A stretch of 64,000 bases of DNA from Orbicella franksi (Eukaryota), in assembly GCA_964199315.1 (NCBI GenBank), contig OZ116700.1, positions 10,354,001 through 10,418,000 of the forward strand, written 5' to 3'. The notes beneath the pieces were generated by a model. That model did no database searches, was not told the origin of the DNA, and worked only from the letters and a program-made list of their open reading frames with translations. Each line of letters begins with the position of its first letter. Position 1 is the stretch's first letter. Positions 3,601 through 18,600 of this stretch are shown piece after piece. The position numbers and the translations under genes were made by a program.

Positions 3601-6600
3601 AAGGATTTATTATATGGACTTCAGGGAGATTCTTCTTGCAGGAAACAGCAGCTAGTCCCAAGCAGGCAAGATAGCTCCATCTTGTCCGCTCAGGTAGCCA
3701 ATCATCGCGCAGGATTTGGTTCATCTTGCCCACTCACAAAGCTACAGCGTAGCCATATAATAAATGAAAGTATTGCTCAATAGCTTTCATAATTTTGAAT
3801 GGTCACGCACTACAGTAGGGTGTCATTCACGGAGTGACCTGAAAGTGACAGCTTGTACAAGATACAGCAAAACTAAAGAACGTGAAAGTTCATGTACTGC
3901 CCAGCAACTTTCATATCAAATTTTAAGACTAGACATACATGTACAAAGACACATTTATAGTACATGCACCTGCTTAGCTGTCTCAAAGTCTTGTCTCATC
4001 ACAGCTGTCTGGTACTCCAGGACCGACAGCAGCAGGGAGTAACCAACAACATTCATATCCTTGTCACTCAAGTAAAGCCTGTTGTCTTTGGGGATGTAGC
4101 CAAGAATGTACATTGTCCTAAACAAACCAGGAACAGACCAAGTCAATAAACACAGCAGTGAATAGTCTGTCAACTTTCAACTTTATTGGTCACAAAATTA
4201 CAATATAATTGCAACCCATACACATGTGTATGCAGTTTTGTTTGAACACCTTTCTAGTTGTAGTTGGGTCCAATGGAATGTTAAGTGATTTATATCACCT
4301 AGTGTACAAAATAACTGTAGCAGCTTGATTCACTTCCTTCACCATTAATGTAGGTTTGAAAGGCGACAAGCTTCACTTACTCTCTGCACCAATTGTATTT
4401 AGGAGTTAGTGATGGAATCAAGCCAGTTCAATTGACATATTCCAATTACGAGTGCAACCCTTTCATTATGAAAATAGGTTCAACTAATTATAAATAGTAT
4501 AGCCGACCTATTCATCTACTGAAGATATGGTTCACAACAAATACATGTACATGTATCTAGAAATTGCAACTGCCATTGTACATACATGTAACACAAACTA
4601 CAGTGCAAATAATGTGAGTGAGTGAGAACTGTATTAAAGTGTCCAAAACCTTATAGCCCGGAAATAATACACTATAATATGGGAAAATGCATGCACAGAT
4701 GACAAATTTTATAAATGCACCACAAACCTGTCTAGGTGAGCAATGGTAACAATTTCACCTCCAACGTAATAGTTGAGACGGTTCACAGCATTAGTGTAGA
4801 TAAAACAGTCTCCAACCCAAATGCCAGTCTTGACACAGTCTTCTATTTCCCCACAAACCTAATATGCACAAGGAGAAACATTCTTCATTGACATCACAAC
4901 TATAACCCACATACATTGCTGTACTAATGCAAAACAGACTATTCACTATTATGATCCCACTTACACTGTATAACTCAATTTTTCTTGTTGTAAAAAAATC
5001 AAGCCACTGACAGAATATTTTACCATTTGATTATGTGTACCACATTTAACTCTTATTATTAAACACTTGATCATTGGATAAGACATTTCAATAGTTTTCA
5101 TTGGTTTAGTCATGATGGTATTTGAGCAGTTACACCATTCTCCACAAATATGGTGAGCATACGTGTAAATTTTTGGTGCGTTTTTATTTTATTTTACTCT
5201 AGTTTCCTATATTTTGGGGGCGTTTTTAATAAAAACAATTATTCCAATAGCACTTGTTGGTTATGAGATGAATATAGCCACCTTGGTGCTACGGGCCTTG
5301 TTGTCTATCTACTGTCTCATATCCAATGCACGCTCATGGAATAATAATTATTGTGAGATAATCAAATTGAATAACTAACATGTACAGTACAATGTATATT
5401 ATTGAACNNNNNNNNNNNNNNNNNNNNNNNNNNNNNNNNNNNNNNNNNNNNNNNNNNNNNNNNNNNNNNNNNNNNNNNNNNNNNNNNNNNNNNNNNNNNN
5501 NNNNNNNNNNNNNNNNNNNNNNNNNNNNNNNNNNNNNNNNNNNNNNNNNNNNNNNNNNNNNNNNNNNNNNNNNNNNNNNNNNNNNNNNNNNNNNNNNNNN
5601 NNNNNNNNNNNNNNNNATTTCACCAGTGAGCCTGGGGCTCATTTTAATGTGAACGTGTATCCTAAAATTAAAATGTAAAATTTAAATATGTTACAGTATC
5701 TATTCAATAAAAATACAAAAACTAGACTATAAAATTTAAAATTGAAAAACTAAACTATAAAATTTAACTAGACTACAAAAATTTAAATATGTAAACTAAT
5801 AGATACAAAGATTACAGCCACAATTGGCCTCTGTAGTCAGATTAACATTGTTCAGTAAGTTTTTAAAAATTCTAAGAGAGGACACTCCTCTTATATTGTC
5901 AGGTAGGTTGTTCCATAAACATGAAGTTATGTAGCGATAAGATTTATGCAAATACTTTGATTTAAAGGTAGGCTGATTAAGCTTACAATAGCCTCTTACG
6001 TCATAACTGCTAGAACGCAATGAGAACAATTCCTTGATGTAGTTTGGCCCCGTGATAAATAAAGATTTTTAAAGAAGGATTAGGGCTTGCATGTATCTGC
6101 AATGCTCCAGGGACTTGATGTTTACTATCTAAATGACCTACATGTACCTATACTGTATAGTAGGGGTTTCATTAACATTTTCAGCAGAAGTGCAACTGGG
6201 GTTAGTAGGGGTTTCATTAACATTTTCAGCAGAAGTGCAACTGGGGTTCTCAGGCAGGCAAAACTTTTTGAACTGAACTTCATTTTAAGAAAAACTTTCC
6301 TCTACCTGTAAATGGTTAAACCAGGTGGGCAAAATCATTCTCACAGTCAGTCAACTTGCCCGGTGCCAGCCCTTAATGAAACCCCTGCCTATAGCCAATA
6401 ATTATTTGCAGCCTTGCTTTATGTGTACCACACTATTGTGCCACTTAAAGAACTGAATAACTAGCATGCACCATTTACATTGTAGATGCACAAAAATTAC
6501 GGTAATCTTACATCAAAAGCATCCTCGATGCCATCTTCAGTCATGACCTCTGGTGTTTCCTGTGCTTTAGCAACATTTTCAGCACTATACTTGAGAATAA

Positions 6601-9600: not shown

Positions 9601-12600
9601 ACTGAGATAAAAGTATATAATTTTAAAGGCAACACAGTTGACAAACCTTGATAAGAATACTTCCTTCATCATATCCAAGGGCAACATTGTTTGACCCCTT
9701 GAACATGGCCATACTCCAAACCCTCTCAAGACCATAATTCAGGGTGCTCTCCAGTCGGTAAGTGTTTGCTTGCCAAATGCGTACAGTGCCTAAAGGGTGC
9801 AATAAACAGTAGAATCAGGTAATTACATGTAACAATTTAAGCATCAATTACCAGACAGAATATAATAATTATCTGATAGTTACATGTACATTCTTCTGAA
9901 CAAATACATGCACTGCTCAAATGAATCATTGCATTGAAACATAATTTGCTTTGACTGTTTTTGATTGTTCAATATTTTGGAAAAGCAAAAAAAGAGGGAA
10001 AAAACAGCTTTGATCAGTTTTAACTATCCAAGGCATCTTTTTCTTTTGTTTTTGTCTCCAAAAACGATGAGACATAATATCAAAAAGTAAAAATGTTCTC
10101 TGGTTGAAAGATTAAAAACACAAGCTTTCAGCTTTGGAACATAGCAAGCAATCCTGAGCATGCGAAAGAGCCCTACATGTATCTTGCCCTCCCAGGTAGC
10201 CAGTCACAGTAAACGATTTGGTTCATCTTGCCTGCTTGTGAAGCTACATGTACATGTACATGTACATGTACATGTACCAATGAAATAGTTACTCTCTAAA
10301 CGTGTATGCTGAAGTTGTACAGGTCCATGTATTTTGAAAAACTTATATGCAGTTTTATAAAACAAACACAAAACCAAAGCACAGACAATATACTACAGTA
10401 CATGAGCACATGTTCATGTTACACATATTATTTCCACTAGTCAGTGAAAACAACTCCACATTATCTTGCAGCCAAATTTAGCGATCATCGTCGAGTATAT
10501 TATTGATTCTTTGTGGCAACATGGTCTTGAAAGAACATGTATAGGTATTATACTTTTACTGCCACCACTGTAAAATAATCTGTGTCAAAATACCAGGAGC
10601 TTTTTTACATACCATCCTCTGAACCAGTCAAAATTATGGGCAATTCTGGGTGAAATCCAACACAAGAGATGTTCTGGGCATGACCTTCAAGTGTTTGCAC
10701 ACAAGTTTTGTTCTGGAACATAACCAACAACCAATTCAGAAAAGAAACTTAGAAAGCAAAATTTAACAACTACTACATGGACACCGTACATGTACAAAAA
10801 AAAAAAAACTAATTAAACATAAAAACAAACCTGATAGTCCCATATCTTTACCAGTCTATCATCAGCACCAGATATTAGATATGGCTTCTCACCACCATGG
10901 AAATAATCCACACAATTTACACCCTGCAATACAATGATAACAAGACACACTTTGAGTAACCATAATAAATATTATTATATAAACATGTATATACATGCAA
11001 GGTCATTTAGCAATGTTCACTTGACACAATATTACAGATATTTTACAAAATACATGTACATACATTGGAAATTATAATATTAAAATTAATAAAAAGTTTA
11101 CTTAATGTCCCATTAATTAAGCACATAGACCTGTATACTGTATATACCTTTTCATGTCCTTCTAGAGTGAAGTTAGGAGTGTTGGATCCAAGCTGCCACA
11201 CCTGAAAAGGAAATGTAAATTAATTTTCAAGATGGTACATGTAAAACAGTCAAATTTTCATATACGACTGTAATGGTGTTGTAGCTCAGGGGGGCTGGCC
11301 AAGCATTATCTCAAATTAACTTCTCATATGTGGGCCCCAAGCGGGGTCTAAACATTTAAACTTTTACTGAACAAATTAATGGAAATTAATTCCTTGCGCA
11401 GGTTCAAAACATGCACAAGATGCCAAAAGTCAGTCACCTCCTGGCAACCAGCCTTGAAATTCTGGTCATCATTTCAAACCCTGCCTAGTACCTTGCACAT
11501 AATACATGTATGTATACCCAGTATGGTTGAAATTGTGGCTCAGTACAGATGACACAATGTAATACACAGAAGGTACATGTAGAGCAGGACCATTACACTA
11601 CAAAGTTTATCTACAACACAGCGCATTAAGGAGAAACATTTTTGTGAGCAGACCTACACGAACAGATGTACAAGTCATGTATACAATGCCTTTTGTTTTC
11701 TTCCTTACTGTAAAAGGATCTTAGTCAATTGAACACAGTGTTGTTATAATGAGTAGAATAGAGAGTAACTAAGTAAACACTTTATTTAGTGAGGATAACA
11801 CTGGCTAAAAACTAATAAACTTCCTCAAATAATCAAAATTATCAGACATCTACATGTAGCTTAGCAGAATAGTGTGCCTCTGATGGTGATTTTGCTGGCA
11901 GCTGGCTTTTTTAGACAACCATGTGTACATTACAAATTGTGAATGTACATTGTAATTCTGACTAGCTCAGTGCTATACACAGGTTACACTTTACCTTGAT
12001 TGTTCTGTCTAAGGAAGCACTAGCAAACTGGTTGTTATCCTTTGGATTGATGACAATTTGCATCACATAATGGGTGTGGCCCTCAAACACTTGAGTGCAC
12101 TGCCATTTTTTATCCCAGTCCCATAGTTTGATCAACATATCATCTGCAGAAAGACCAATTACAAAAATAAGATTACAACAGCTGTAATGCAATTTTAATT
12201 GAAGCTACAAGTACACTTAATATTTCTCTTGGCACAATACAAATATTACATTTAAGTTGATTAACAACTGCATCGCAAAATGGAGGCTGGGTGCCTGTGA
12301 TATCCAGGAGCTTCCACTATTGGCAGCCAGCTCCTAGATGGAGACTGCTCCCATGGCTGGCAAATCCTGGCAAGCCAGCCATGAGCCCCCACGCAGAAGG
12401 GAGAGCAGGCACCCGTCACACTGTGTGAACAGTGGAAAAGAGGGAGGGAAATGGGGGGGAGGGAGGAAGCCTTGAAGATGAGGTCCCATGAACTGCCACG
12501 CAAATAACACGCTAGCGCCTGTAACGCTAAACACACTTCAGTCAAAGAGCACATGGGATCTGGCGCATGCCCATGTATGAAACGCCGCTGACTCCAGACA

Positions 12601-15600
12601 ACACTGGCGCTCTTTGTTGTTAACTCCGTTAAATTGCATTTAACTGCATTTAACAACTGCATCGCAAAATGGAGGCTGGGTGCCTGTGATATCCAGGAGC
12701 TTCCACTATTGGCAGCCAGCTCCTAGATGGAGACTGCTCCCATGGCTGGCAAATCCTGGCAAGCCAGCCATGAGCCCCCACGCCAAGCCGGAGGACCTCC
12801 GAGCAGCGCGCTAGCCAGCTCGGAGAAGAGAGGGGCTCATGGATGGGGAGGCCAGAGCCCCGAGAAAAATGCCCAAATCCGTAGGCACCCAGTAACTGGC
12901 AAATTAGTGACAAAAACCATACCTGTTAGGCAAGTCGTTCAGCTACTGAAAGGATGGTTTCCACAGGTGTGCGCACATATAACAAGTAAGCATCACTCGA
13001 CCAGCGACCCATTGTCTTAATGAGATGATCAGGAACACCTCTCTGGGCAGCAGTTGTAGCGGCTCCAATTCTAAAACTATGACCCGAGAACTTTCCAGGA
13101 ATACCTGCTGCCTGTAGAGTGGTTTGAAGAAACGAGGAAAGCCGAGATCTAGAAAGAGGAGAGCCATCTTGGTGAATAAAGAGAGGTCCGGTGCCTGGCC
13201 CACGAAGATGAAGGTAGTTTGTTAATGCAGTCACAGGACAGAGAGGAAGGGAACCACGGCCAAGATAGATGAAACAACCCTGCCTGAAAGGATCAGTCTT
13301 TGCACACTTGATTAACACTCGAAAGCTTTGGGGATTGGTGGAGGAATCTACTTGAAGATCTGCCGCGGTCAAATGAACAGATGGATCAAAGGTACCATTT
13401 GTTGTAAATTCACCAGCTCTAAGAAACCCAAAGAAGCCAAGACAGCAGGCTGCCCATAGCATGACACTGTCAGGGTTGATAAAATCTAAAGACTTGTGCA
13501 AAACAGACATAAGGTCGGCTGTCACTGGTTGGCGCTGAGGGAGATTTGGGCCCTGATGACGTTTGATCCCTCGTAAGAGACGCTGAAGTTGAAGACGGTT
13601 GACAATTGGGTCTGGGAAGCCATAGTCAATGTGTAAAGAACGGACTGCAGACAAATATACTTTAATGGAAGAATGATGAAGACGATCTGCTAAATGGGTA
13701 CAGAAGCGCATCAGAGTTTGTTCACTGGCTGGTAAAAGAGGCTGACTTGGCTCGAAGGGAGTATCCTGACTACAAAAATCTAAGAACTGACGTTGAGCCG
13801 AAGCATAAACTTGGCGAGTAGAAGGTGCGAGGCCATTGGTCAAATAGAACTGGCATTTATCTGTCAAATTACGGGCAGCTGAGCCAGCAGCGTTAACGGA
13901 ATTGGAGTCGCCCCAGGAGCTGCATGAGGAGCAAGATGATGGAAACGCTGAAAATCAAAACGAGATAAGGCATCAGCAATCGAGTTGTCTTTACCCGGCG
14001 TATGAGAGGCAGTAAAGGCAAAGGAATGTCGGGCTGCCACAAGTGACAAGTGGCGGAGAAGAACCATCATGTTCGGATCCTTCGTGGTGCCCGAACGCAA
14101 AACACTAACGACTGCCATGTTGTCGGAGCAGAACTCAACTCGTTTAGAAGCCCATCGGTGGCCCCATAGGGAAGCTGCAATAACCACCGGAAACAACTCT
14201 TTGTAGGCAATTGCCAAGGGATGCTGAACAGCTGACCATTCACCCACAAACCATTCATGATCACAAATTGCACCATAACCCCGAGCACCAGCAGCATCTG
14301 AGGAAACGTAAAATTCAGGCAAGGTCGCCCACTGTGGGGAAAGCAGGAAACTGAGACCACCCCAAGAATGGAAAAATTCTCGCCACCAACGGAGGTCTAA
14401 GCGAAAGTCTTGGTTGATCCTAATTGGGTGGCTATCACGTCGAAATGCTGACAGTAAATTGATCATGCGTCTCAAGAAGGTACGCCCCTGAGGAACTACT
14501 TTACATGCGTGTTGGAGATTGCCAATGAGAGATTCCAGCTCCTTCCGTGTGCAATGTTGTTTGAGGGACCAGGCTTCCAGAAGTGCAGCAATACGACCAA
14601 ACTTATCCAGCGGCAGACGGGCCTGAAGTGAGAGAGAATCGAGCTCAATACCGAGCACAGTTAAACAAGTGGATGGCCCCTCCAATTTGTTCGGGTGAAG
14701 AGGAATACCCCACTTTTTAAATAGCTTAACACAAGTATCAATATTGTTCTGGCAAACAGGTGAGTTAGGAGGGCCCAATGTATGGAAGTCATCCAGGTAG
14801 TGTAAAAGAAAATTCACATTATAATTGTGTTTGAGGATCCACTCGAGCATATCTGCAATGGACGAGAAGATGAAAGGAGCAGAGCGTAGTCCAAATGGAA
14901 GCGCCATATCAATAAAATATTTCCCACGCCACTTCATACCAAGTAGGTAACGATCATCAGAATGGACAGGGACATTACGGTAAGCACTTTCCACATCGAA
15001 CTTTGCCAACAGCGTTCCTCTGCCGTGAAGCATGATCCCATCGATGATATCATCAACCTTCATGTACTGCACTGAAAAGGGTTCTTTTGGAATGCCATCA
15101 TTGACACTATGGCCTAAAGGACTAGACAGATCCAAGATAAGCCGCCATTTTCCAGGCTGGTACTTCTTCGGGATAATTCCAAAGCGACTCACATGGAGGT
15201 TTGGGATAGGGGCTATAGCAAAGGGGCCAGCTACACGGCCTTTGTCGAGTTCCGTGAGGAGATACTGGTCGATGACTGAAGGCTGAAGGGATGCTGAAGG
15301 CATATTTTTATTCTCCGATTTTAAAGATACCGCCCGAGGGTCAAAACCCAGCTGAAAACCATTTGTGAGACCTGAAATCACATACTCCACTTGCGTTTGG
15401 TCGGGGTAAGAACACAGTTCATGCCGAAGTTCCTCCGCGTCTATGGGGGTTACTCTGGATGGGGGGACCAGGTCTTGCTGCGGGGTGCCCAAAATGGACA
15501 AAGAACAAGAGGGCAAAGCATGGTGTGCCACTTCGGAGGGCATGTCATTACCAAAAGCATCTTGTGGTGCAGGAACAACCACATTAACAGGAACAGGAAT

Positions 15601-18600
15601 AAAAAAAAATTTGAAAAGGAAACTGAACAAGATGAATGTACGCTATTTACATATGGTTTGGATCCCACTTCAACGCCGCAGATGTTTGCTTTGGGATGGG
15701 GGAGTTGACTGGGAGCGCCGGTAAGAAGAGGTTGAGGCCCGAAATGGACAGTTGACACGTGGATGATCACCTTCACATTTCTCACAGCGATGGAGGTACC
15801 GGCATTGACCAAAGGTCCAGCGACAGGTGCCATCATTCCAAGATCGGCAAAAGGTGGATGAACCGGCTATTGAAATTGAAGCCGAAGACGAAGTGGTTGG
15901 CTGCTGGCTTGACTGGGGAAGAGGTGATGAAAGAGTATGGAAGTTGTACAAATCATGGTTCATGTGAGACCAGTCCACCAAACCTGCAGCAGCTGCGTCC
16001 TTGCGGAATGCAACATCGTAATGGAGCCAAGCCTTCCCAGGGAACTGGCGCGACGTCTTGAGAATTAGCAGCTTGTATTGTGTCATGTCCTGCCATCTGG
16101 AAGAATGAACACAGCAGAAGATCCATGAGTACACAGTGAATGCTTCAACCCATGTCACGATATCAGTGATCTCTTGCACCCTTTTCTTGGAAGAACTCAC
16201 GAGAAGTTTGCCATCAAGGTACGTTTGGGGCTCTGTCTCCTGGGCTTTCAAGTTCTCTGCTAGCAAGTCAGCAAGATCCACAAATTGGCCAGACCTAATT
16301 TTTGTCACCAGCTTCTCCAGGAAAGGGGAATAACCGGGGCCAACAACAAACGGCCTATTCAGGGATGTTGAGGTAGAGGCGATGGAGGAATTAGAACCAA
16401 AGGAGACCAATGGCATGAAAGACTGGTTGGAAGATGGCAATCCATTCGCAGCACCACGAGAACCAAACAACGATGGCGAAGATAAAGAAGAATTGCCTAA
16501 CGTGCAGTATGTTGAAATAAAGGGAGGAACGACCAAATTACCTGAGGACTGGCCTGCAGAAGAAGGCAGTGGTTGGTTAATGACAACAGAACCGGATGAC
16601 GTCATGCCCGACGCCGCGTTTCCCGCTGTCGAAGAACTCGATGAGTGACTTTGCAAAGCCGCCAAAATGCGAGGTAACGTATCCCCCAAGGCTTGTGAAA
16701 ACGCTTGACTGAGGTCCTGTTGAGAGAGGACGAAGGAGGGCGGAGTGGACACCGGAGTCGAAGAAATGGGAGGACGTACGACCGAAGAGGGAGAATCGGC
16801 TGAAGAAGAAGGCTGACTTGAATCCAACATGGCGGCCACACTGTTGTTTGTTGCACGACGATGTGCCATACCAAACGAAAGAAACAACGGCAAGATTCGA
16901 AAAACGACGAACGAAGAACAAATAATGCACACGCTACTCAGGGAGGAAGCCTTGAAGATGAGGTCCCATGAACTGCCATGCAAATAACATGCTAGCGCCT
17001 GTAACGCTAAACACACTTCAGTCAAAGAGCACATGGGATCTGGCGCATGCCCATGTATGAAACGCCGCTGACTCCAGACAACACTGGCGCTCTTTGTTGT
17101 TAACTCCGTTAAATTGCATTTAACTGCATCAAAATCTCAACAGTTTACTGCATCATTCAATGACAATCTGAAGTTCAAAACCTAACAAATGACTATGTTT
17201 TCCGTTATGGTCAATCGTGATTATAACAACAAGCTATTAACCCCGAAAAAAAACAAACAAACAAAAATGGATCGAAATCTACCAATCACAACCCACACAA
17301 GACCTTTTGAATCTACTAAAGTAAACTTTTGTTTCCTGAGAGGTCTGCTAATATGATTGATGGCAGGGAAACACAAAAGCATTGATTGAGCAGACTTTGT
17401 ATGTAATAAATTGAAAGATGCAGCGAAAAGGTAGAAAACACACATTTGTTGTAGTGACAAGGCAAAAAGAAGTGCAGAACACAAATTCAATTTGATCATT
17501 CTCAGTCCATCAGACCATTAAAAATTCATTGCTTTTGTTTTACTCACCACTGCTGGTAAGAACATAGGGCTGCGTTGGATGAACAGCAATTGAACGTAAG
17601 TAATCTGAATGAGCTTCAAATCCATATGCCTGTTAAAGAAACAACAAAATTGTCAAAGTTTACATGGACTAAACAGGTTGAACAAAAAATGTACCATGCC
17701 CTGAAGAAATTTCTGAAATCCTTAAATACTCTGATCCCATTTTCTCTGATAGAAACTCTGTGACACAGAGATGAACAGGAAAGGTGGCATGGCAACACAT
17801 CAAATTGAATGCAACAAAAAAAATTTACTTAAAATTTTGCCAGTCATTTGTCTCACTTCACTGAAAGGCATACAGACATATGCACATTGATAACTACAAT
17901 GTATATACACATACATAATTATATACCCTGAGATATAACATACACAGCCCCTGGCTTTTCTGCAAGTTTTTCAGTAAATGCTGCTTTTTGAAAAATGCTC
18001 TATCACCACGCACAAAAGAAATGTCTTTACCTTCTCTAGAGTGTTGTAGTTGAAGACTCTTAGCATCATGTCATCCTAAAAAGCAATTCACACAATCATG
18101 CTCAGAGTACTACATAGGCTGGGTTACGTAATGTATGTTTCACTCAAGGTTCACAGCATTTTTGGACCAAATTCAAGAACTTGTTAGGACCTACATGTAC
18201 ATGTACACTTCAATAAATCTAATTTTTCAAAGACATACAAAATGCAAGTAAGAATTTTACTGTACATGCAAACAAAGAAATGCAGAGCTACATAAGTTAG
18301 TTTACTTTTCCAACTGCCAAGCACCAAATTCAACCAATACTGAGTGGAAGTACAGTACATGTACTTGAATATTAGTGCATGATATTAAGTATACAATTAA
18401 AACAGAATCATACATAAACTTACAGATCCTGTCACCACCCAGTTCTTTCTTGGTACAAATTTGGCTGTACGCACTACAATAAATAATGCATACAATAAGA
18501 AACTGAATCAGTTGAATGTTTCAATATTGGTTATATTATTGTACTTTTAATCAAAGTTATATGCATTTACCTCCTAAATCAAATGCAAAGCTATGTACAT

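What the first reader, a model, noticed from the sequence alone, without database searches (positions are those of the whole stretch)
12261..17129. Intact, very young Ngaro/PAT-type YR retrotransposon in sense orientation inside an essential gene
Seen: the complete A1-ORF1-RT/RH-YR-B1-A2-B2 layout; B1 equals B2; A1 and A2 differ at 2 of 190 nt; all catalytic motifs are intact. The element ends 117 bp upstream of the exon 7 acceptor and expands intron 6 from about 0.5 kb to 5.4 kb. It contains an internal AATAAA on the sense strand (15307-15312). Inference: potentially active and probably polymorphic, and could disturb COPB2 splicing or cause premature termination.
Basis: partly seen in the sequence, partly recalled or inferred. 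Interest (0 to 1): 0.7.

Follow-up and report, generated by a model that had tools for sequence, protein, structure and literature searches.

The report
Polymorphic Ngaro retrotransposon in coral COPB2 intron
A 4.9-kb jumping gene of a known kind (Ngaro, which uses a tyrosine recombinase) sits in an intron of a coral's essential COPB2 gene; some individuals carry it and others do not, this copy has a small frame-breaking change of its own, and there is no sign that it harms the gene.

Summary
Window 12261-17129, minus strand, is a 4,869-bp tyrosine-recombinase retrotransposon laid out A1-ORF1-RT/RNaseH-YR-B1-A2-(65-nt spacer)-B2. It lies in sense orientation in a COPB2 (coatomer beta') intron that it enlarges from 535 to 5,404 nt.

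It has no methyltransferase domain and no inverted repeats, so it is Ngaro-type, not PAT or DIRS1-like.

The family is young. The assembly holds 15 copies with the RT core at 99% or more, plus 8 solo A-X-B remnants.

The insertion is polymorphic. Contigs of two public runs from two studies hold the exact empty site (a joint that skips exactly 4,869 nt, with no duplication). Both runs look heterozygous. A third run holds only the filled allele.

Twenty insertion sites share a TTWA|Y motif that matches the last four bases of B. This fits the known DIRS-order model of recombination at a short junction sequence.

"Intact" is overstated. This copy has 19 private substitutions and a private +2-nt change that splits the family's 666-codon ORF2 frame, although all catalytic residues remain.

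No RNA data could be obtained, so any effect on COPB2 splicing is untested. The AATAAA occurs in all 13 full-length copies.

The scan holds another note on this same stretch (s1-207930) and notes on other Ngaro-type elements in this genome. Verdict: a new member of a known kind.

The parts
12261..17129 (-). Whole Ngaro-type element, 4,869 bp
   Evidence: The boundaries are set by the repeat ends. The read joint 12260->17130 skips exactly 4,869 nt. Twelve other full-length copies start and end at the same bases.
16940..17129 (-). A1, the 5' terminal repeat (190 nt)
   Evidence: It differs from A2 at 2 positions, both CpG>TpG.
15673..17034 (-). ORF1 (454 aa from the first ATG), gag-like, with a C3H1/CCHC-like zinc-finger region near its C-terminus
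   Evidence: There is no Pfam hit. It has 124 homologues, mostly unnamed; the named ones are Porites 'C3H1-type domain-containing protein'. The nearest Atlas clusters are unnamed and mostly cnidarian.
15453..15866 (-). The 5' piece of the family-typical ORF2 frame (138 codons), cut off from the rest in this copy
   Evidence: In six other full-length copies this frame runs on for 666 codons.
15601..15609 (-). Homopolymer run holding the private +2-nt change (plus one substitution) that shifts the ORF2 frame
   Evidence: 12 of 12 other copies have T6+G here, and this copy has T9. table 4: the majority contigs of three runs lack the 2 nt.
13867..15543 (-). ORF2 core (559 aa from an internal ATG): reverse transcriptase plus RNase H
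   Evidence: Pfam RVT_1 1e-15. It aligns to Ty3 RT around YLDD and the ADALSR motif. The AlphaFold2 model (pLDDT 90.9) aligns over 530 columns to CaMV and Ty3 RT/RNase H. D183, Y249-L250-D251-D252, D416, E449, D474 and D524 are kept.
12929..13954 (-). ORF3 open frame (342 codons): tyrosine recombinase. There is no ATG before its N-terminal SAM-like domain.
   Evidence: Pfam Phage_integrase 5e-9 and Phage_int_SAM_4 4e-6. R179, K216, H292, R295, W318 and Y326 are kept. It overlaps ORF2 by 88 nt in the -1 frame.
12650..12783 (-). B1, internal repeat (134 nt)
   Evidence: Identical to B2.
12460..12649 (-). A2, internal repeat (190 nt), directly adjoining B1
   Evidence: The B1|A2 junction is the presumed template for the B2|A1 junction.
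12395..12459 (-). Unique 65-nt spacer (X) between A2 and B2
   Evidence: It is present in all copies and in the 389-nt solo A-X-B remnants.
12261..12394 (-). B2, the 3' terminal repeat (134 nt), ending in TTAA
15307..15312 (-). The only AATAAA on the element's sense strand, inside ORF2 coding sequence
   Evidence: It is present at the same place in all 13 full-length copies.
17548..17629 (-). COPB2 exon upstream of the insertion (…[27 protein letters not shown], phase-1 donor)
11995..12143 (-). COPB2 exon downstream of the insertion ([14 protein letters not shown]…LDRTIK)
   Evidence: It matches coatomer beta' residues 120-166 of 5a1u_D at 1e-33. It is single-copy in the genome.

Best explanation
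This is one copy of a young Ngaro-type retrotransposon family (order DIRS, tyrosine-recombinase retrotransposons) in a coral genome. It is a presence/absence polymorphism inside a COPB2 intron, in the same orientation as the gene.

**Shown**
- The layout is A1-ORF1-RT/RNaseH-YR-B1-A2-X-B2.
- There is no methyltransferase domain and there are no inverted repeats.
- There is no target-site duplication.
- An exact empty allele segregates with the filled allele.
- The family prefers TTWA|Y targets, which match the TTAA that ends B.

**Inferred from the published DIRS-order model**
- A full-length RNA is reverse-transcribed by the Ty3-like RT/RNase H.
- The ends are completed using the internal B1|A2 junction as template.
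- The recombinase joins the B2|A1 junction of the cDNA to a genomic site that shares the short junction sequence. One TTAA-like copy ends up on each side.

**This copy**
- It is probably no longer a source of new copies. It has a private +2-nt frame break in the 5' part of ORF2 and 19 private substitutions that no other copy shares.
- Its RT, RNase H and recombinase cores remain open with all catalytic residues.
- It most likely behaves as a tolerated intronic passenger in COPB2.
For: **Structure and domains**
- Repeats and ORFs.
- RT/RNase H fold over the whole of ORF2.
- Conserved catalytic residues.

**Family**
- 13 full-length copies, 1 internally deleted and 1 split copy carry the RT core at 99% or more.
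- There are 8 solo A-X-B remnants.
- Pairwise divergence is 0.55-1.6%.
- Differences between the repeats within one element are 0-9 of 324 nt.

**Polymorphism**
- The joint 12260->17130 skips 4,869 nt with no shared letters. It is seen in X1 (depth 70 against 125 in the flank) and in X4 (23.8 against 38.5).
- In both runs the flank contigs stop exactly at 12260 and at 17130.
- The X9 contig runs unbroken from the flank into the element (11950-12289). It carries three flank SNPs against the assembly, so it is another haplotype.
- Junction words are held in 6 runs of 4 studies.

**Target motif**
- T at position -4 and at -3 in 16 of 20 sites.
- A or T at -2 in 18 of 20 sites.
- A pyrimidine at +1 in 18 of 20 sites.
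- Resampling gives p<0.0005 for positions -4 to -1.
- This agrees with the junction-trinucleotide rule described for DIRS1-like elements (PMC3266345, PMC7192593).

**Private frame break and substitutions:**

**Classification criteria:** PMC4157794, PMC9210276.
Against: - No RNA evidence exists here for transcription of the element or for normal COPB2 splicing in carriers. The raw RNA run laid 0 reads.
- The +2-nt change sits in a homopolymer and could be an assembly error. It could not be checked in reads of this copy, because contigs collapse the family.
- Several relatives start ORF2 right at the conserved core. The frame break may therefore lie upstream of the functional start and be harmless to the element.
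- Heterozygosity in X1 and X4, and homozygosity in X9 (about 6x depth), are read from contig topology and depth, not from genotyping.
- No reference Ngaro sequences were available, so placement rests on structure and not on a tree.
Confidence: 0.85

Rival explanations
1. The COPB2 copy is itself a fully autonomous, currently active element. Its ORF2 would start at the internal ATG (window 15543), downstream of the +2-nt change, or else that change would be an assembly error.
For: - ORF1, the RT/RNase H core and the YR frame are all open, with every catalytic residue present.
- Relatives such as P0004 and P0007 begin right at the conserved core.
- The repeats differ at only 2 of 324 nt.
- The family as a whole has been active recently. 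One copy has identical repeats.
Against: - All 12 other full-length copies lack the +2 nt. Six keep a 666-codon frame that this copy splits.
- A short VNSV-like motif upstream of the break recurs in the ORF2 frame of relatives at 65-80% identity. This suggests the region is translated.
- None of this copy's 19 private substitutions is shared by any other assembled copy, so there are no visible daughters.
Confidence: 0.2
2. The insertion measurably damages COPB2 expression, through premature polyadenylation at the internal AATAAA or through splicing into the element, and is deleterious.
For: - It is a sense-oriented 4.9-kb insertion in a short intron of a single-copy essential gene.
- It carries one AATAAA and one ATTAAA on the sense strand.
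- An acceptor-like TTTTGATTTTCAG at window 13948-13960 is in phase with the upstream exon's phase-1 donor.
Against: - The filled allele is found in several runs and under two species labels. In X9 it is the only allele seen.
- The insertion lies 117 nt from the acceptor and 418 nt from the donor, outside the usual branch-point zone.
- The AATAAA and ATTAAA are conserved in all 13 full-length copies, inside coding sequence. The element's own full-length RNA must read through them.
- There is no RNA evidence either way.
Confidence: 0.12
3. The element is PAT-like or DIRS1-like, not Ngaro.
For: PAT elements share the split direct repeats A1…B1A2B2 (PMC4157794).
Against: - ORF2 is filled end to end by RT and RNase H.
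- The last RNase H aspartate is residue 524 of 559, and the YR SAM-like domain starts within about 40 codons of where the ORF3 frame opens. That leaves no room for a methyltransferase domain.
- Pfam finds none.
- There are no inverted repeats.
Confidence: 0.03
4. The insertion is an assembly artefact, or the empty site is a product of precise excision and not the ancestral allele.
For: - The element is a repeat at about 99% identity, which is where assemblers can err.
- Tyrosine recombination is reversible in principle.
Against: - The left junction is bridged by a contig of X9, a run whose flank SNPs differ from the assembly.
- Junction words occur in runs of 4 studies.
- X1 and X4 contigs branch exactly at both element ends.
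- Excision cannot be told from ancestral absence with these data, but ancestral absence is the simpler reading.
Confidence: 0.04

Closest known systems
Ngaro retrotransposons (first described in zebrafish, sea urchin and fungi; abundant in the cnidarian Nematostella vectensis, 114 instances, PMC4157794)
   Same: - Split direct repeats A1-[ORFs]-B1A2B2, with the internal repeats downstream of the YR.
- A gag-like ORF1, a Ty3-like RT/RNase H and a tyrosine recombinase.
- No methyltransferase domain.
- No target-site duplication.
   Different: - There is no fourth ORF with an SGNH hydrolase, as some vertebrate Ngaro elements have (PMC9210276).
- ORF1/ORF2 and ORF2/ORF3 overlap, whereas Ngaro elements are said not usually to overlap (PMC3266345).
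- A 65-nt unique spacer lies between A2 and B2.
- The YR frame has no ATG before its N-terminal domain.
Ngaro elements of Cafeteria burkhardae (PMC8547959)
   Same: - The same A1-[ORFs]-B1A2B2 layout and three-ORF coding plan.
- A low copy number per genome (10-25 there, about 15 here).
- Isolated solo AB repeats, explained as recombination between the 5' and 3' repeats.
   Different: - The host is a protist and the elements favour virophage DNA.
- Those elements are about 6 kb and GC-rich.
DIRS1-like elements (DIRS-1 of Dictyostelium and relatives)
   Same: - The same enzyme set (RT/RNase H and YR).
- An internal region that templates the joined ends.
- Integration by recombination between a short junction sequence and the same sequence in the target, without duplication (PMC3266345, PMC7192593). 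Here the matching motif is TTWA against TTAA.
   Different: - DIRS1-like elements have inverted terminal repeats plus an internal complementary region, and a methyltransferase domain. Neither is present here.
- Work on DIRS-1 points to linear single-stranded cDNA intermediates (PMC7192593). Nothing is known for this family.
PAT-like elements (Pat1, Toc, kangaroo)
   Same: Split direct repeats; a zinc finger in the gag-like protein.
   Different: PAT elements carry a methyltransferase domain (PMC4157794). This element has none.

Membership tests
Ngaro (order DIRS) | Split direct repeats A1 … B1 A2 B2, with the internal repeats downstream of the recombinase | tested here: met
   the A copies (190 nt) are 99% identical and the B copies (134 nt) 100%. 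The order on the minus strand is A1-ORFs-B1-A2-(65 nt)-B2.
Ngaro (order DIRS) | A tyrosine recombinase in place of a DDE integrase | tested here: met
   Pfam Phage_integrase 5.5e-9 and the SAM-like N-domain. R179, K216, H292, R295, W318 and Y326 are conserved across 52 homologues.
Ngaro (order DIRS) | Ty3/gypsy-like reverse transcriptase with RNase H | tested here: met
   Pfam RVT_1 1.2e-15. The best match by sequence among solved structures is Ty3 RT. The model (pLDDT 90.9) matches CaMV and Ty3 RT/RNase H at E 5e-21 and 2e-18.
Ngaro (order DIRS) | No methyltransferase domain | tested here: met
   RT and RNase H fill ORF2 (530 of 559 residues aligned). Pfam gives no other domain at E up to 10. 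The ORFs leave no free coding space.
Ngaro (order DIRS) | Insertion without target-site duplication | tested here: met
   The empty-site joint has 0 letters shared between its two sides. The flanks of 20 insertions show no duplication beyond the TTWA resemblance to the element's own end.
Ngaro (order DIRS) | RT and YR cluster with reference Ngaro sequences in a tree | not tested
   No reference Ngaro, PAT or DIRS protein sequences were obtained with the tools. The database hits are unnamed.
PAT-like (DIRS superfamily) | A methyltransferase domain between RNase H and the YR | tested here: not met
   and the ORF coordinates.
DIRS1-like | Inverted terminal repeats and an internal complementary region | tested here: not met
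   0 inverted repeat pairs of 30 nt or more in 11500-18000.

The most novel reading that the evidence does not exclude
The family is still mobile in living coral populations. Because the element lies in sense orientation, its internal acceptor-like site at the start of the recombinase frame (window 13948-13960) could be used by the COPB2 pre-mRNA. That site is in phase with the upstream COPB2 exon's donor. Carriers would then make an in-frame COPB2-recombinase chimeric transcript, a host-driven route to express a recombinase that lacks its own start codon.
Probability: 0.07. Interest if true: 0.6.

Novelty: new member of a known kind. Interest (0 to 1): 0.3.

Why it matters
Tyrosine-recombinase retrotransposons are poorly studied, and their integration step is known mostly by inference.

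This locus offers a natural filled/empty allele pair with base-exact ends. Together with about 20 sister insertions, it shows integration without duplication at TTWA|Y sites that mirror the element's own junction. That extends the junction-sequence rule of DIRS1-like elements to a cnidarian Ngaro family.

For coral genomics it is a ready presence/absence marker shared across two species labels. It is also a test case for how an essential housekeeping gene tolerates a large sense-oriented insertion.

Beyond that, it is an ordinary young transposon insertion.

Tried and rejected
**RNA evidence**
- The one raw RNA run laid (X21, polyA, organism C) gave 0 reads on the whole stretch. That is no test.

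**Independent check of the +2-nt run**
- The read contigs collapse the family and show only the majority form.
- An exact-protein look-up of this copy's ORF2 found nothing on record.

**Spliced or fused recombinase**
- A Logan contig holding a 96%-identical YR is simply colinear with the element.
- None of the 120 listed ORF1 homologues (124 hits) carries a recombinase domain.
- There is no canonical slippery heptamer in the ORF2/ORF3 overlap.
- How the YR is translated therefore stays open.

**Searches that found nothing**
- phmmer of the YR against solved structures gave nothing meaningful.
- Rfam and tRNA scans of 11500-18200 gave nothing.
- ORF1 has no Pfam family.

**Exon numbering**
- I could not find the start-codon exon with short motif searches.

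**Copy number**
- Depth ratios (about 13 in X1, 10 in X4, 58 in X9) are mentioned only as a hint. The tool warns that they are not copy numbers.

**Rejected readings**
- A bacterial-type reading of the ORFs, because this is a eukaryotic intron.
- PAT or DIRS1 membership.
- An assembly artefact.


Full report
**What is there.** Window 12261-17129 holds a 4,869-bp element whose genes all lie on the minus strand.
- Repeat finding gives two direct-repeat families.
  - The 190-nt family is at 12460-12649 and 16940-17129 (99% identical).
  - The 134-nt family is at 12261-12394 and 12650-12783 (100% identical).
  - No inverted repeats were found.
- Read in element sense, the order is A1 (17129-16940), internal region, B1 (12783-12650), A2 (12649-12460), a unique 65-nt spacer (12459-12395), B2 (12394-12261).
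- The two A1/A2 differences are both C/T at CpG sites (12499 against 16979, and 12510 against 16990).
The one addition is the spacer between A2 and B2.

**Coding capacity.** Three frames are open.
- ORF1 runs 17034-15673 (454 aa from its first ATG).
  - It has no Pfam family.
  - It has 124 homologues in the protein collection. Most are unnamed, and the named ones are Porites 'C3H1-type domain-containing protein'.
  - Its nearest Atlas clusters are mostly cnidarian.
  - Its C-terminus carries a cysteine/histidine zinc-finger region.
- ORF2 matches Pfam RVT_1 at 1.2e-15.
  - It aligns to the Ty3 reverse transcriptase around the YLDD box and the terminal RNase H motif.
  - In an alignment with 53 homologues this copy keeps D183, Y249-L250-D251-D252 (RT) and D416, E449, D474, D524 (RNase H).
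  - An AlphaFold2 model built on that alignment has mean pLDDT 90.9.
  - The model matches the RT/RNase H of cauliflower mosaic virus over 530 alignment columns (E 4.6e-21), and also Ty3, foamy virus and MLV enzymes.
  - RT plus RNase H therefore fill the whole protein.
- ORF3 matches Phage_integrase (5.5e-9) and the SAM-like N-terminal domain (3.8e-6). It keeps R179, K216, H292, R295, W318 and Y326.

**Classification.**
- The published criteria are as follows (PMC4157794, PMC9210276, PMC3266345).
  - DIRS1-like elements have inverted repeats and a methyltransferase domain.
  - PAT elements have split direct repeats and a methyltransferase domain.
  - Ngaro elements have split direct repeats downstream of the recombinase and no methyltransferase domain.
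- This element has no room for such a domain, and none is detected.
- A tree against reference elements could not be made, because no named references were obtained.

**The family in this genome.** The assembly is 497 Mb, from a coral according to the run labels.
- It holds 13 full-length copies, 98.7-99.2% identical to this one.
- A 600-nt probe from the RT core finds 14 complete matches at 99% or more and one split copy. Nearly all candidates were scored (50 found, 40 scored).
- Pairwise divergence among the 13 is 0.55-1.6%, mean 1.0%. Each copy has 11-34 private substitutions, a star-like pattern.
- Differences between the repeats within one element range from 0 to 9 of 324 nt. This copy has 2, which is in the younger half but not the youngest.
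- Eight isolated 389-nt A-X-B units are scattered over other chromosomes. They are the expected product of recombination between A1 and A2, and were described for Cafeteria Ngaro elements (PMC8547959).
- Three of the 13 full-length copies keep all three frames at the family's usual lengths. I name none of them, as the operators ask.

**State of this copy.**
- It has 19 private substitutions (0.39%). Seven are CpG transitions, and 13 lie in the first third of the element.
- The same positions show up as differences from the majority contigs of three independent runs (table 3).
- It also has a private change in a homopolymer. The other 12 copies read T6 followed by G, and this copy reads T9, that is +2 nt and one substitution (window 15601-15609).
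- In six other copies the ORF2 frame is open for 666 codons from element position 1264. Here it is split into 138 and 592 codons.
- The conserved core starts about 50 codons downstream of the break, and an ATG at 15543 precedes it. A 559-aa RT/RNase H could therefore still be made.
- Some relatives start exactly at the core (P0004, P0007). Others keep a short VNSV-like motif upstream of the break in the ORF2 frame, which suggests the region is translated.
- So 'intact' is overstated. Whether the break disables the copy is open, and an assembly error in the homopolymer cannot be excluded.

**Polymorphism.**
- A 60-nt query spanning the left junction has two indexed words. X9 and X25 hold both, and X4, X5, X26 and X27 hold one. 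That is 6 runs from 4 studies.
- Twenty runs hold the flank itself.
- Laying contigs of X9, X1 and X4 on 11950-17800 gave a joint from 12260 to 17130 that skips exactly 4,869 nt, with no letters shared between its sides.
  - In X1 its depth is 70 against 125 in the flank.
  - In X4 its depth is 23.8 against 38.5.
- In both runs the flank contigs stop exactly at 12260 and start exactly at 17130. That is the shape of a heterozygous insertion in a de Bruijn graph. X4 also holds a junction word.
- In X9 one contig runs unbroken from 11950 to 12289, 29 nt into the element, and there is no empty joint.
- X9 differs from the assembly at three flank positions (12097, 17597, 17650). It is therefore another haplotype, and independent support for the junction.
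- The COPB2 exon is single-copy, so the empty joint is not from a paralogue.
- X1 and X4 carry species label A, and X9 carries label C. The filled allele occurs under both labels.

**Integration site.**
- I compared the rebuilt empty sites of 12 full-length and 8 solo insertions with the element's own B|A junction (…GTTGTTAA|ATGCAG…).
- The four bases upstream of A1 are T (16 of 20), T (16 of 20), A or T (18 of 20) and A (12 of 20).
- The first base after B2 is a pyrimidine in 18 of 20 sites.
- No resample of 2,000 from the same flanks reached the observed match for positions -4 to -1.
- At the COPB2 site the four bases are TTTG.
- This is the pattern expected if the recombinase exchanges strands within a short sequence shared by the joined element ends and the target. 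That leaves one copy on each side and no duplication.
- The same rule has been proposed for the 3-nt junction of DIRS1-like elements (PMC3266345, PMC7192593).
- The replication steps before integration are inferred from those papers, not shown here. Work on DIRS-1 favours linear single-stranded cDNA over circles (PMC7192593).

**Host gene.**
- The exon downstream (11995-12143) encodes [10 protein letters not shown]…LDRTIK. It matches coatomer beta' residues 120-166 of 5a1u_D at E 1.4e-33.
- The exon upstream (17548-17629) encodes …[23 protein letters not shown].
- The intron is 5,404 nt, or 535 nt without the element.
- The insertion lies 117 nt from the acceptor and 418 nt from the donor.
- The AATAAA at 15307-15312 is real and is the only one on the sense strand. 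It and the single ATTAAA are conserved in all 13 copies inside coding sequence. The element's own full-length RNA must read through them, so they are weak evidence for premature termination.
- The flanking intron is strongly CpG-depleted (observed/expected 0.19 and 0.40) compared with the element (0.64). This fits a recent arrival in a CpG-poor gene body.
- No RNA evidence was obtained. The raw RNA run laid no reads.

**Age.**
- Two differences in 324 nt of repeats give about 0.3% per lineage, with a wide Poisson range.
- The 0.39% of private substitutions is an upper bound, because some may predate insertion.
- This is of the same order as within-species diversity. It is compatible with an old segregating allele shared between closely related species labels.
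- I give no age in years, because the species and its mutation rate are not known to me.

**Verdict.**
  - The family is young and the insertion is polymorphic.
  - This copy's autonomy is doubtful.
  - Harm to COPB2 is untested and indirectly unlikely.
- It is a new member of a known kind (Ngaro elements are abundant in cnidarians, PMC4157794).
- Interest is modest. Its main value is a clean filled/empty pair and a target-site rule for a metazoan Ngaro family.

Noticed in passing
G000 C14:8.33-9.06 Mb (loci L017, L019, L020, L023-L028): At least eight copies of a related element (72-76% identical to this family) lie on one strand at intervals of about 43-55 kb. This looks like a large tandem segmental array that carries the element along.
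   Followed up: no
G000 C15:12010737-12020982 (L015, L016): One family copy is split at element position about 2410-2415 (a TTTAAA site) by a 5.4-kb insert. The insert has tandem-like terminal repeats and a 176-nt stretch 76% similar to this RT. The same stretch recurs at nine or more other places, so this is probably a second tyrosine-recombinase element family nested in the first.
   Followed up: partly
G000 C14:1790-7047 (L008, L030, L048, L049): One full-length copy is followed directly by a second A-X-B unit (…B2-A-X-B). This would fit a multimeric cDNA, or recombination into an existing B|A junction.
   Followed up: partly
window 13948-13960 and 15784-15786, minus strand: The recombinase frame opens at an acceptor-like TTTTGATTTTCAG. 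A GTGAGA donor-like site in ORF1 (exon end at 15786) and the upstream COPB2 exon's donor are both in the matching phase. There is no RNA support, no ORF1-recombinase fusion proteins in the database, and no slippery heptamer in the ORF2/ORF3 overlap.
   Followed up: partly
G000 C4:27935602-27936624 and C4:27993009-27994031 (L021, L022): Two near-identical truncated copies (element 4029-4869 with an extra partial A) lie 57 kb apart, probably through a segmental duplication.
   Followed up: no
window 15486-16990: 13 of this copy's 19 private substitutions fall in the first third of the element. This could mean that its 5' part comes from a source lineage not otherwise present in the assembly.
   Followed up: no
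window 11950-17800, run X9: The depth ratio of element interior to flank is about 58 in X9 (species label C), against about 13 and 10 in X1 and X4 (label A). This hints at a higher copy number in some individuals or species, but X9 is shallow and the tool warns against reading depth as copy number.
   Followed up: no
   Followed up: no
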